A stretch of DNA of 63,843 nt, filler included, from Octopus bimaculoides (lineage: Eukaryota): the NCBI RefSeq assembly GCF_001194135.2. It is 6 parts of 6 records of this genome, joined end to end, with 100 filler letters (N's around TTAATTAATTAA, not from the genome) between each part and the next. Parts side by side here need not be neighbours in the genome. Positions count along the whole stretch, not along the records: positions 32,947 to 56,213 come from NC_068983.1; 5 more parts are not named here. The stretch is one strand, 5' to 3'. The first letter of the stretch is position 1, and each line of letters begins with the position of its first letter. Below, one piece after another: positions 34,689-37,905 of the stretch. Position numbers and translations under genes: made by a program. The notes below the pieces were generated by a model that made no database searches, was not told the DNA's origin, and worked only from the letters and a program-made list of their open reading frames with translations.

Positions 34689-36212
34689 GATGGTTGTAAC
34701 TCGATTTCAAGTTAGACCTATTGCCTGATTTCTTTATGCCCTAGAATATCATCGATCAGCTGCTCGAATATGGCTTTTGAGGCCTGCCAAAGACTTGCAA
34801 GGTTTTTTGACAATTAGTGCAAAATAACTCAGTGATTGTATAGGTTACTGTCCCATGAACTTTGCTGTGCCTTTTCAAGCCACTTTGTGATCCGCATACT
34901 TTATGACAGCATGCATTCAAAATCATCTGTCCCTCAATGTGCGATTGTGCAATGTGTGATTTCATATGGCTCTTTTGCTTAGACAAATCTTTCCACATTC
35001 ATCACAGGTAAAATCATCATGTTCATTAATGCTTGTTAGAACATCATTCCTGTCACCTTTTCTCATCTTTCTCTTGATCTTTGCATGCGCCATTCTCTTC
35101 CTTTCAAATTCATATTTACTTTCATACACAACCTTTTCCCATTTTTTCTCGGCAATGCGCTAAATCTTCCCAGTTGTCAATTGGAACATTTATCTTATTC
35201 ATTCCCGACTTCAGACAGTCTTTGTACCTCAATCCTTGGTGTGTGGAATGGACGCTTACCTGTCACCAATTCTCCGTAAAAAAGTTGTTTAAGCATTCTG
35301 TTGCCTGTCATTCTGATTACTGCAATAGTAAAGCTTCAATACTGAAGCATTTCCCTTTTTCAAGCACCTCATCGTCACTCACAAACATAAATATCTTCCA
35401 GCTGATCCTCAAAATCCTTCTGAGACATTGTTCCATAAGTTTTAAGTGCTTACGATACACAGTCCAGGTTTTGCAAGCACACAATAAAGAGGTTAAGATA
35501 CATGTATACCTTTGTCACAGTGGAAATACCGTGTCTAGACGACAGACGATCTTCCAGTTTGCCAAAAGCAAAACTGGCTTTCTGAATGCGTAGTGATACT
35601 TCATCAAGATTCGCTGATGTATTTAGTGTGCTCCCTAAGTAAACAAACTTAGAAACCACTGCAAGTTTTCTTCCGTACACGAATATACCAGGTCCTATGT
35701 ATGGCATTCCTGGTGCTAGCTGAAACGTCAACAGTTTCGGTTAGATTTATGACTAAGCTAAGTGCTTCATAAACCATTGAAATTGCATTCATAAGTATGA
35801 GTGACCATATCACAATGATCTGCATATAGGAGGTCTGTAATAAGAGTTGAGGACATCCTTGACTTAGTTGACAGTCTTTTGATATTAAAGGTTTTTCCTG
35901 TTGTGCGATATCTATAGTAAAATAGAGGGTGAAGAGAGTGGATGCTAGTATGTCACCTATTTTACGCCATTCATGACAGAGATAGGCTCCGAGAGCTTTC
36001 CACCAATGTTGATCCTTACTTCCATGCTATCATGAAACTGATTCAGAATTGTGAGAAACTTTACCGAGCATCCAAGTCTCCTCAAGATCTCCCACATGGC
36101 AGTTCTATTGACAGTTAAAAGCCTTAGTAGAATCAATGAATACCTGATAAAGTCCTATTTGCTGTTCCACACACTTTTCCTATAACTGTAACTGCCGTGC
36201 AGAGAAGATCAT
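34689..36212 (-). mobile_element. RTE LINE 3' half (RT core to C-terminal zinc fingers), decayed
   Basis: Minus translation: [101 protein letters not shown]. Confidence 0.9.
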
Positions 36213-36253
36213 CTAACTGCCGTACAGAGAAGATCATCTAACTGCCGTTCAGA

Positions 36254-37905
36254 GAAGATAGAATGATATTGCTGAGATTGCCTTTAAAAATAAGGTCGGT
36301 ATGTAACACTTGTTAGTGTTTATGCACCACCTGTGAATGCTAATGAAAATGAAAAGCTCTCCTTTTATGATGTGCTGAAAGAAAATATCCACAAATTCCA
36401 CATGATGATAATATTACCATATTGGGTGATTTTAATGCTAGAGTTTATAAAGACCATGAGACATGGGATGTGATTGGAAGGCACAGAGTGGGAAATTTTA
36501 ACAGCAATGGCTTACTTTTCTCAGAAACGTGTTCTGAGCTGAATCTATTTATTATGAGAACTGTTTTTCAACAAAGAGATAAGTTCAAAACTATATGGAT
36601 GCATCCCGGTTCAAAGCAATGGCACTCGATAGACTATATCACTAGAAAACGAGATAAAAGTGATTTCTGCATAGTGCGGGTCATGCGGGGAGCAGAATGC
36701 TGGACAAATCATCGCTTGGTTCGAGGGAAGATCAAGTTTGTAGTGAAGCCAGAAAACAGACACAGTGGTACTGGCATCCCTAAACGTTTGAATGTGAACC
36801 TCCTTAAGAATAAAACAGTTAGAGTAGAATTTCAGTAGAAAATCGAAAATTTGGATTGGACAGATGAGTGGATGGACTTCAGGGGACAACTATACAATTT
36901 AAGTAAAGAAGTTTTAGGAGTAAAGAAGTTTTAGGAGTAAAGAAGTTTTAGGAGTAAAGAAGAAGAAACATCAAGATTGGTTTGATGACAGTGATGGAAA
37001 TATTCAACATTTGTTGGAAGAAAAACGAAAGGCATTGCATTCATTACTAGCAAATGTTTCTGATCAAAATAGAGATTTTTCAAAGAGAGAAAAGCAGATG
37101 TGCAAAGAAAGATTCGAAGCATACAGGATACATGGTGACGGAAGAAAGCAGAAGAGATAGAGACTGCTTCCAATGTTAAGAACACTAAATTATATAAACT
37201 CCTTCGTGAGGTGTATGGGCCATCATGTCCTACTTTGGCTCATGTGAAGAATAGGAATGGTGTTTTATTGAGGGAGCCCAAAGACATCTTAAAACGATGG
37301 TAGGACCATTTCAATGAACTTCTGAATCGACCATTAGTATAGATATGATTCCACAGAATGCACCCACTGAGTGTTTAGATGACATCCCGTCAATGGAGGA
37401 AACAATAACAGCAGTATCAAAGCTGAACATTGCTAAAGCACCGGGAATTTATTAGTCTGAATGTAGAACTATTTAAGTTTGTAGGTTACTACTTGCTAGA
37501 AATGCTGACAGCAGTAATACAGAAGATATAGAAAAATGAAGTTATGCCAAAAGACTGGAAGGATGCAGTCATGGAAGTTGTGTTCAAGAGTAAGGGACAA
37601 AAAGATGAAAACAATAACTTTCGTGGTATTTGCCTGCTTGATACGGCCGGCAAAGTTGTATTACGAATAATGTTGAACCGGCTGCAGATATATGTGGCTA
37701 ATGAGATTCTTTCTGAATCACAGAGTGGATTCAGAAAGGGTAGGGGTACTGTTGATATGATCTTCTCTGCACGCCAGTTACAGGAAAAGTGTGTGCAACA
37801 GCAAATAGGACGTTATCAGGTATTCCTTGATCTTACTAAGGCTTTTCACTCTGTCAATCGAACTGCCCTGTGGGAGATCTTGAGGAGACTTGGATGCCCG
37901 GTAAA
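36254..37905 (+). mobile_element. RTE LINE 5' part (apurinic endonuclease plus RT N-terminus), inverted relative to the 3' half
   Basis: SVYAP, GDFNARV, WMHPGSKQWHSIDYI, WTNHRLV (endonuclease); [72 protein letters not shown], then (TACA)n. Confidence 0.92.

What the first reader, a model, noticed from the sequence alone, without database searches (positions are those of the whole stretch)
34689..37905. RTE LINE insertion with twin-priming (5' inversion) architecture
Seen: on the minus strand the order is flank, inverted [EN..RT-N] segment (37905 to 36254), forward [RT..zinc fingers..tail] segment (36212 to 34689), flank. The two halves are complementary parts of one ORF2 and overlap by about 150 bp (37757-37905 versus 36060-36212; I count 10 substitutions and 2 indels). 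The breakpoint-proximal end of the inverted piece faces the outer flank, and both outer flanks are same-strand (TACA)n/(CA)n, as expected for one insertion into one microsatellite. Known: this geometry, with deletion or duplication at the inversion point, is the signature of twin priming described for mammalian L1 and generally regarded as rare in other LINE clades. Inference: twin priming or an equivalent template switch by an RTE reverse transcriptase in an invertebrate.
Basis: partly seen in the sequence, partly recalled or inferred. Interest (0 to 1): 0.8.

Follow-up and report, generated by a model that had tools for sequence, protein, structure and literature searches.

The report
Half-inverted RTE-like LINE copy in octopus
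An old, decayed copy of an octopus RTE-like jumping gene has its front half flipped relative to its back half, as expected if both DNA ends at the target primed copying of the element's RNA ("twin priming", so far documented almost only for mammalian L1); it is a single, fairly ordinary fossil that cannot be fully proven from this sequence.

Summary
On the minus strand, 34689-36212 holds the 3' part of one LINE ORF (RT C-half, C2H2 fingers, 67-bp 3'UTR). On the plus strand, 36257-37905 holds the part just upstream (endonuclease from about residue 155 to the RT N-half). The halves share 149 bp (10 substitutions, 2 indels). A colinear relative (Logan contig L008) runs straight across the breakpoint, so the window copy is the rearranged one. 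Both halves are equally distant from L008: 17.0% vs 16.6% in the overlap, 16.6% vs 19.0% outside it (not significant). They carry similar numbers of disabling lesions. The inner junction is LINE-to-LINE with no target DNA, and the internal breakpoint of the inverted half faces the flank. Twin priming explains this best (about 0.7). Two refinements: the 3' microsatellite is at least partly the element's own (TGTA)n-type tail, a family trait, and the 5' microsatellite lies where the 3' tail of a neighbouring SINE is expected. No TSD can be read, and the 149-bp overlap far exceeds the L1 norm (median 12 bp). Mis-assembly, later inversion and two independent insertions remain possible. This is a new member of a known kind, of modest interest.

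The parts
34317..34688 (-). Compound microsatellite downstream of the LINE 3' end. On the element's sense strand it reads (TGTA)~70 followed by (TG)32. It is the element's own simple-repeat tail plus, probably, the remainder of the target microsatellite.
   Evidence: TRF rows. Relatives end ...CCATCATG followed by a (TGTA)-like tail (L008) or ...CCATCAT followed by (AT)n(ACAT)n (L002).
34689..36188 (-). Non-inverted ('forward') cDNA segment. It holds the RT C-half, the C-terminal region with three C2H2-like fingers, the stop codon at 34756-34758 and a 67-bp 3'UTR.
   Evidence: Frameshift-aware alignment to P0096 residues 657-1181: 55.6% identity, 1 stop, 11 frameshifts, 54 residues deleted. 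Colinear with L008 630-2251. zf-C2H2 hit at 20.4 bits, below the Pfam cut-off.
36189..36259 (-). Inner (inversion) junction. A 25-bp unit of LINE sequence (sense GATGATCTTCTCTGNACGGCAGTTA, the 'DMIFSARQL' codons) is repeated 2.8 times at the 5' end of the forward segment. There is no non-LINE DNA between the two halves. GAT at 36257-36259 can be assigned to either half.
   Evidence: TRF, alignment, junction strings. The D-R-M start of the endonuclease match is at 36257.
36257..37905 (+). Inverted cDNA segment, 5'-truncated. It runs from the endonuclease (about residue 155 of a 1185-aa ORF) through the linker to the RT N-half.
   Evidence: Alignment to P0096 residues 155-704: 55.8% identity, 4 stops, 6 frameshifts. 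RVT_1 at 52.7 bits covering profile positions 4-97 of 205, and Exo_endo_phos_2 at 19.2 bits. 37155-37905 matches L008 24-776.
37757..37905 (+). The copy of the 149-bp duplicated stretch that lies in the inverted half. Its partner is 36060-36212 on the minus strand.
   Evidence: 10 mismatches and 2 indels out of 155 columns. Polarised with L008: about 5 private changes here and about 7 plus 2 indels in the partner.
36060..36212 (-). The copy of the duplicated stretch that lies in the forward half.
37906..37988 (-). (TGTA)20 microsatellite (ACAT on the plus strand) that abuts the internal breakpoint of the inverted half. It is the presumed target DNA whose top-strand 3' end served as the second primer. 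It lies where the 3' tail of the adjacent SINE is expected.
   Evidence: TRF, junction string, SINE comparison.
37989..38150 (-). SINE copy on the minus strand (core ...GGTGCTCCAGCATGGCCGCAGTC...). Its 3' end abuts the (TGTA)20 array. It is context for the insertion and not part of the LINE.
   Evidence: Two further copies, at 46772->46557 and 39020->38900, end at the same point and are followed by other simple repeats.

Best explanation
This is one retrotransposition event of an RTE-like LINE (single ORF: AP-type endonuclease, reverse transcriptase, C-terminal C2H2 fingers; short 3'UTR; (TGTA)n-type tail) into a (TGTA)n microsatellite, probably the tail of an older SINE. The nicked bottom strand primed reverse transcription on the RNA's tail and produced the forward segment, which reached ORF residue ~657. 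The 3' end of the cleaved top strand primed internally on LINE RNA at residue ~704 and produced a second cDNA that ran upstream to residue ~155. The two cDNA ends were then joined to each other, with at most about 3 nt of microhomology. The result is flank - inverted [EN..RT-N] - forward [RT-C..ZnF..tail] - flank, with 149 nt copied twice. The copy was dead on arrival and has since decayed by roughly 3.6% per lineage. Shown here: the geometry, the overlap, the equal divergence and the LINE-only inner junction. Inferred: the priming steps, whether one or two RNA molecules were used, the identity of the target, and when the 25-bp tandem array at the junction arose.
For: (1) The halves are complementary and adjacent on the ORF, residues 155-704 and 657-1181 of P0096. 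A colinear relative, L008, spans the breakpoint (24-776 and 630-2251).
(2) The orientation is the one twin priming predicts: the internal breakpoint (37905) faces the flank and the 5'-most ends of both segments meet in the middle.
(3) The inverted half contains 1.5 kb that the forward half lacks, so it needed its own template. Snap-back synthesis on the forward cDNA is therefore excluded.
(4) The inner junction holds no target or microsatellite DNA.
(5) The ages match. In the overlap, A vs L008 is 25/147 and B vs L008 is 24/145. Private changes are about 5 vs about 7 (binomial p = 0.77). The unique parts are 16.6% vs 19.0% from L008 (p = 0.23). Disabling lesions number 10 vs 12 (p = 0.53).
(6) The inferred common ancestor of the two overlap copies reads as an intact ORF matching the family. 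An A-B distance of 6.8% fits the amount of decay seen in both halves.
(7) The model and its hallmarks are described in PMC2912911 and PMC12016303.
Against: No TSD can be recognised, because both flanks are simple repeats.
There is no convincing microhomology between the flank end (TAGACATACA) and the RNA downstream of the priming site (GTTTCTCACA).
The 149-bp overlap is about ten times the L1 norm (median 12 bp, quartiles 4-17; PMC12016303). On a single RNA it would require strand displacement.
The forward copy shares a 2-bp CT deletion with an unrelated O. bimaculoides copy (P0005) that the inverted copy lacks. This is either recurrent slippage in CTCT or a hint of different source sequences.
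(TGTA)n arrays are common in this region, so matching flanks carry little weight.
Only one locus is available, from a gapped draft assembly (N runs).
Confidence: 0.7

Rival explanations
1. A DNA-level rearrangement after insertion. An ordinary 5'-truncated colinear copy later had its 5' 1.65 kb inverted, with a 149-bp duplication, for example by replication template switching or staggered-break repair.
For: Inversions with duplicated breakpoints do occur. Tandem duplications at and near the junction (25 bp x2.8 and 17 bp x3.6) show that this stretch has undergone slippage-type events. The large overlap is atypical for L1 twin priming (PMC12016303).
Against: One inversion breakpoint would have to coincide with the element's 5' end, because no flank or microsatellite DNA was carried to the inner junction. 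The A-B divergence (6.8%) is as old as the decay of the whole copy, so the event would have had to follow insertion almost at once.
Confidence: 0.1
2. Two independent insertions of the same family in opposite orientation into the same microsatellite. One would be normal and 5'-truncated. The other would be 3'-truncated, either by internal priming or by a later deletion.
For: These elements have simple-repeat tails and plausibly favour matching microsatellites (PMC6007223). The shared 2-bp deletion of the forward copy with P0005, absent from the inverted copy, could mean different source copies. Similar divergence is also expected for two insertions from one active burst.
Against: A 3'-truncated LINE copy is not a normal TPRT product. 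Its truncation point lies within 150 bp of the partner's 5' end (roughly 0.08 by chance on a 3.6-kb element). No microsatellite is left between the two copies. No other copy of the family lies in the 23-kb piece.
Confidence: 0.1
3. An assembly artefact: a chimeric join or a mis-oriented contig in a short-read draft.
For: The piece contains N gaps (44802-45621 and 50083-50092), so it is a scaffolded draft. The region is extremely repeat-rich, and the perfect 17-bp x3.6 array could be an assembler stutter.
Against: There are no Ns between 34000 and 38800. A collapse of repeats would join copies in the same orientation through shared sequence. It would not create an 88%-identical inverted duplication with private mutations in both copies. 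Both outer junctions and the inner junction lie within continuous sequence.
Confidence: 0.08

Closest known systems
Twin-primed (5'-inverted) L1 insertions of mammals (Ostertag & Kazazian 2001 model, as described in PMC2912911, PMC12016303 and PMC4245944)
   Same: The architecture is the same. There is an inverted upstream segment whose internal priming point faces the flank, and a non-inverted 3' segment carrying the tail. The inner junction is element-to-element, there is a duplication at the inversion point, and both segments are 5'-truncated products of one element.
   Different: The element is RTE-like, not L1. It has no ORF1 or poly(A), carries a simple-repeat tail, and has a C2H2-finger C-terminus. 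The host is a cephalopod. The overlap is 149 bp against a median of 12 bp in human L1. The TSD is unreadable, and no clear microhomology is visible at the internal priming site.
The single 5'-inverted Nimb-2_DR insert recovered in chicken DT40 cells (PMC4245944)
   Same: It is a non-L1 LINE that shows a 5' inversion, as a rare event.
   Different: That case was an experimental de novo insertion of a zebrafish element with defined junctions. This one is an old genomic fossil from a different clade.
Octopus RTE-2_OV and the O. bimaculoides RTE (PMC9115989)
   Same: They are single-ORF octopus LINEs with an endonuclease, an RT and a C2H2 zinc finger, about 1100 aa long. The best named protein hits of the window copy are O. 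bimaculoides fragments.
   Different: RTE-2_OV is reported with 5' and 3' UTRs of about 600 nt, whereas this copy has a 67-bp 3'UTR. No sequence of RTE-2_OV was available, so identity with it is untested. That paper describes no inverted copies.

Membership tests
Twin-primed 5'-inverted LINE insertion | Two segments of one element lie in opposite orientation, and the non-inverted one carries the element's true 3' end and tail. | tested here: met
   The forward half ends ...CAACCATCATG followed by (TGTA)n, as does L008.
Twin-primed 5'-inverted LINE insertion | The inverted segment is the region immediately upstream of the non-inverted one, and its 3'-most element coordinate abuts the flank. | tested here: met
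   Residues 155-704 against 657-1181. The break after GGTAAA at 37905 faces the microsatellite.
Twin-primed 5'-inverted LINE insertion | There is a deletion or duplication at the inversion point. | tested here: met
   A 149-bp duplication is present. It is much larger than the L1 median of 12 bp (PMC12016303).
Twin-primed 5'-inverted LINE insertion | The inner junction is cDNA-to-cDNA with no target DNA, often with microhomology. | tested here: met
   Only LINE-derived sequence lies between the halves. GAT (3 nt) can be assigned to either side, a call that rests on the protein alignment alone.
Twin-primed 5'-inverted LINE insertion | One TSD flanks the whole structure. | tested here: inconclusive
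   Both flanks are (ACAT)n/(AC)n arrays, so any duplication is hidden within them.
Twin-primed 5'-inverted LINE insertion | The top-strand end and the internal priming site on the RNA are complementary. | tested here: inconclusive
   The flank reads TAGACATACA and the element reads GTTTCTCACA downstream of the break. The only match is a scattered C..ACA.
Twin-primed 5'-inverted LINE insertion | Both segments have the same age and belong to the same subfamily. | tested here: met
   Distances to L008 are 17.0% vs 16.6% in the overlap and 16.6% vs 19.0% in the unique parts (p = 0.23). Lesions number 10 vs 12. The test is limited by having only one colinear outgroup.
Twin-primed 5'-inverted LINE insertion | The structure is present in the genome itself (long reads) and is absent as a unit from the empty orthologous site. 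| not testable with these tools
   The source genome is not in the searchable collections. Look-ups of window ORFs and of octopus proteins found nothing.
RTE-clade LINE | A single ORF encodes an AP-type endonuclease followed by an RT, with no RNase H. | tested here: met
   P0096 has Exo_endo_phos at 64-293, RVT_1 at 606-873 and C2H2 fingers at 1132-1181, with no RNase H hit. The window halves align along its whole length from residue 155.
RTE-clade LINE | The 3'UTR is very short and ends in a simple-repeat tail, not poly(A). | tested here: met
   The 3'UTR is 67 bp here and about 55 bp in L002. The tails are (TGTA)n, (TGTA)-like and (AT)n(ACAT)n.
RTE-clade LINE | The RT falls inside the RTE clade in a phylogeny. 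| not tested
   No reference set of LINE clades was available. The assignment rests on architecture and on the published RTE-2_OV description (PMC9115989), so I call the element 'RTE-like'.

The most novel reading that the evidence does not exclude
5' inversion by twin priming may be a regular outcome for simple-repeat-tailed RTE-like LINEs in cephalopods and not an L1/human peculiarity. In this reading the top strand of a microsatellite target acts as the second primer. The 149-nt region copied into both cDNAs would show that two reverse transcriptases traversed the same stretch, by strand displacement or on two RNA molecules within one integration complex.
Probability: 0.15. Interest if true: 0.55.

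Novelty: new member of a known kind. Interest (0 to 1): 0.35.

Why it matters
In cell-culture assays, 5' inversions were obtained almost only with human L1 in human cells, and were therefore attributed to L1- and host-specific features such as long TSDs and overhangs (PMC4245944). A natural RTE-like example in a mollusc would suggest that the second-strand end can prime reverse transcription in a very different LINE and host. That would make the question testable by a genome-wide census in long-read octopus assemblies. On its own, one decayed copy without a readable TSD is an anecdote. It also bears on annotation, because such copies look like two head-to-head fragments and inflate copy counts.

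Tried and rejected
- Raw-frame Pfam scans of the pieces found only the RT N-half. Frameshift-aware stitching was needed.
- No second copy of the LINE lies in the 23-kb piece, so no local consensus could be built.
- Look-ups of the O. bimaculoides hits P0001 and P0005 and of two window ORFs found no contigs. Neither the source locus nor an orthologue could therefore be retrieved.
- L001 (P0054) turned out to be unrelated at the DNA level.
- A search of the supplements of PMC9115989 for element sequence found none, so RTE-2_OV could not be compared.
- The Ostertag & Kazazian paper itself is not held. The model is cited through later papers.
- A third protein search, for close relatives of the forward half, gave only a few Logan fragments. 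These did lead to L003-L008.
- I looked for a TSD and for priming-site microhomology and found neither.
- I considered snap-back synthesis and rejected it, because the inverted half contains 1.5 kb that is absent from the forward half.
- I considered ectopic recombination between two inverted full copies and rejected it, because it would leave two full-length chimeras.
- I ran no further search on start-codon variants of the junction-spanning ORF, since the chance of success was low.

Full report
**What is there**

Reading 34000-38800 and running TRF gives this order on the plus strand:
- a compound (AC)32/(ATAC)n microsatellite at 34317-34688;
- LINE sequence in minus orientation from 34689 to about 36212;
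- a 25-bp unit repeated 2.8 times at 36189-36259;
- LINE sequence in plus orientation from 36257 to 37905;
- an (ACAT)20 array at 37909-37988;
- a SINE.

The piece contains no other copy of this LINE. It also contains N gaps at 44802-45621 and 50083-50092, so it comes from a scaffolded draft assembly.

**Identity of the element**

A 154-aa RT fragment finds Octopus bimaculoides predicted proteins as its best hits (77-82% identity). The host is therefore an octopod, but I could not fix the species.

A stitched translation finds more than 1300 relatives. The best are full-length ORFs of 1100-1200 aa from marine metagenome, metatranscriptome and Logan contigs. By Pfam, P0096 has Exo_endo_phos at 64-293, RVT_1 at 606-873 and C2H2 fingers at 1132-1181.

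Its contig L002 shows one long ORF, a 3'UTR of about 55 bp ending ...GCCATCAT, and then an (AT)n(ACAT)n tail. This matches the published description of the octopus RTE-2_OV: a single 1109-aa ORF with an endonuclease, an RT and a C2H2 finger, the last noted as unusual for RTE (PMC9115989). I did not build a clade phylogeny, so I call the element RTE-like.

**Checking the geometry**

I aligned both halves to P0096 and P0097 with frameshifts allowed.

| Half | Window coordinates | P0096 residues | Identity | Stops | Frameshifts |
|---|---|---|---|---|---|
| Inverted | 36257-37900 (+) | 155-704 | 55.8% | 4 | 6 |
| Forward | 36212-34764 (-) | 657-1181 | 55.6% | 1 | 11 (plus 54 residues deleted) |

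The halves are complementary parts of one ORF, and residues 657-704 are present twice. At the DNA level the overlap is 37757-37905 against 36212-36060, with 10 mismatches and 2 gap events (E = 4e-47). LINE similarity of the inverted half ends after GGTAAA at 37905, whereas the forward half and the relative continue with GTTTC.

**A colinear relative**

The Logan contig L008 (2305 bp, run SRR11869384) aligns with window 37155-37905 over its positions 24-776. It aligns with window 36212-34667 (minus strand) over its positions 630-2251. L008 therefore runs straight through the breakpoint, which shows that the family's normal arrangement is colinear and that the window copy is the rearranged one.

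L008 ends ...CAACCATCATG followed by a short TCTGTATGTATGATGTA tail and then unrelated DNA. The window copy ends ...CAACCATCATG followed by (TATG/TGTA)n. The simple-repeat tail is thus a family trait.

**Same age and same subfamily?**

Using L008 as outgroup:

| Comparison | Mismatches | Divergence |
|---|---|---|
| Overlap, A (inverted copy) vs L008 | 25/147 | 17.0% |
| Overlap, B (forward copy) vs L008 | 24/145 | 16.6% |
| Overlap, A vs B | 10/147 | 6.8% |
| Unique part of inverted half vs L008 | 97/586 | 16.6% |
| Unique part of forward half vs L008 | 250/1318 | 19.0% |

- The difference between the unique parts is not significant (p = 0.23).
- Polarising the A-B differences with L008 and with the protein relatives gives about 5 private substitutions in the inverted copy. 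The forward copy has about 7 plus two indels (binomial p = 0.77).
- Disabling lesions number 10 vs 12 (p = 0.53).
- The inferred common ancestor of the two overlap copies reads as an intact family-typical ORF.
- The JC distance between the copies is 0.071, or about 0.036 per lineage. With the octopus TE calibration of PMC13282606 (JC 0.065 ≈ 18 My), this suggests an age of roughly 10 My. This is a rough inference.

**The junctions**

At the inner junction nothing but LINE sequence separates the halves. The forward half begins with 2.8 tandem copies of a 25-bp stretch of its own sequence, and the endonuclease match starts at GAT AGA ATG (36257). The GAT can be assigned to either side.

At the outer junction the sequence reads GGTAAA|TAGACATACATAC.... 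I see no convincing complementarity between this flank and the RNA downstream of the break. No TSD can be read inside the simple repeats.

**The flanks, refined**

The 3' microsatellite is at least partly the element's own tail, as shown above.

The 5' microsatellite lies exactly where a minus-strand SINE (38150->37989) would carry its 3' tail. Two other copies of that SINE, at 46772->46557 and 39020->38900, end at the same position and are followed by (TA)n and (TGCG)n arrays.

The SINE copies are only about 70% alike and so are probably older than the LINE insertion. The simplest history is that the LINE integrated into the (TGTA)n tail of a pre-existing SINE, a repeat that matches its own tail. 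This fits proposals that RTE tails pair with the target (PMC6007223).

(TGTA)n arrays are common in this region; two more lie at 40313-40391 and 55496-55581. Matching flanks therefore carry little weight on their own.

**Mechanism**

The inverted half holds 1.5 kb that is absent from the forward half, so it required its own templated synthesis on LINE RNA. Its internal start point faces the target DNA, and its 5'-most end meets the 5'-most end of the forward segment. This is the twin-priming arrangement (PMC2912911, PMC12016303).

The rivals compare as follows:
- A later DNA inversion would need one breakpoint exactly at the element's 5' end, because no flank DNA was moved inward.
- Two independent insertions would need a 3'-truncated LINE copy, a coincidence of breakpoints within 150 bp (about 0.08 by chance), and no microsatellite left between the copies.
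- An assembly error would not be expected to create an 88%-identical inverted duplication with private mutations on both sides.

I put twin priming at about 0.7.

**What does not fit neatly**

- The 149-bp overlap is far larger than in human L1 (median 12 bp; PMC12016303). On one RNA molecule it implies strand displacement; otherwise two RNAs were used.
- The forward copy shares a 2-bp CT deletion (in GACTCTGTC) with the O. bimaculoides protein P0005, which comes from a different, colinear copy. The inverted copy, P0001 and L008 all lack it. No other derived state is shared, so recurrent slippage is plausible, but a different source sequence is not excluded.
- The A-B differences are rich in transversions, 3 ts to 7 tv, against 36 ts to 13 tv for comparisons with L008 (p = 0.023).
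- The three 25-bp units differ from each other only at one and the same position (A, T or C).

**Comparison with what is known, and verdict**

5' inversions make up about 20% of human L1 insertions (PMC12016303). In cell-culture assays with L1, ZfL2-1 and Nimb-2_DR they appeared only with L1 in human cells, apart from a single Nimb-2_DR insert (PMC4245944). My literature searches found no report for RTE-clade elements or for molluscs, though the library is incomplete.

The finding is real and is interpreted correctly in the main. It is a new member of a known kind, and a single decayed fossil without a readable TSD. It is of modest interest unless a genome-wide census shows that the architecture recurs.

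Noticed in passing
window 38203-38690: A nearly perfect 490-bp foldback element. Three consecutive inverted-repeat blocks (50, 29 and 133 nt; 90-97% complementary) lie around a 52-nt centre. 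The termini are CAGGGTTATTCAAAAA...CACTG, bounded by TA on both sides, which looks like a Tc1/mariner-type MITE.
   Followed up: partly
window 38150-37989, 46772-46557 and 39020-38900 (all minus strand): Three copies, about 70% alike, of a SINE with the core GGTGCTCCAGCATGGC. Each is preceded by a (TG)n stretch and followed by a different simple-repeat tail: (TGTA)20, (TA)n and (TGCG)n.
   Followed up: partly
window 39080-39311, 50988-51219, 44187-44413, 44065-44186, 48288-48448 and 48080-48214: A second, more abundant short repeat family with at least six copies at 79-96% identity. It contains GGAATTTGAACTCAGAACGTAGCGGCAGACG. Two copies at 44065-44413 lie in tandem.
   Followed up: partly
window 36902-36962: A perfect 17-bp x3.6 tandem duplication (AGTAAAGAAGTTTTAGG) lies inside the inverted LINE half. 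Relatives have a single copy of this stretch (...VLGxVKKKHQDWF). It is either a very recent expansion or an assembly stutter.
   Followed up: partly
window 36189-36259: The three 25-bp units at the inversion junction differ from each other only at one and the same position (A, T or C, where the family has C). Independent random mutation would not be expected to give this.
   Followed up: no
window 36113-36122 vs protein P0005 (XP_014790513, O. bimaculoides): The forward overlap copy and an unrelated colinear O. bimaculoides copy share the same 2-bp CT deletion in GACTCTGTC. The inverted copy, P0001 and L008 lack it.
   Followed up: partly
window 37757-37905 vs 36060-36212: Differences between the two overlap copies are transversion-rich (3 ts to 7 tv). 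Each copy's differences from L008 are transition-rich (36 ts to 13 tv in total). Fisher p = 0.023.
   Followed up: partly
window 39989-40391 and 44758-45621: A 400-bp compound (ATCT)80 + (ATAC)20 microsatellite. Separately, the 820-bp assembly gap begins right after an (AG)22 array, so the gap probably hides a long simple repeat.
   Followed up: no
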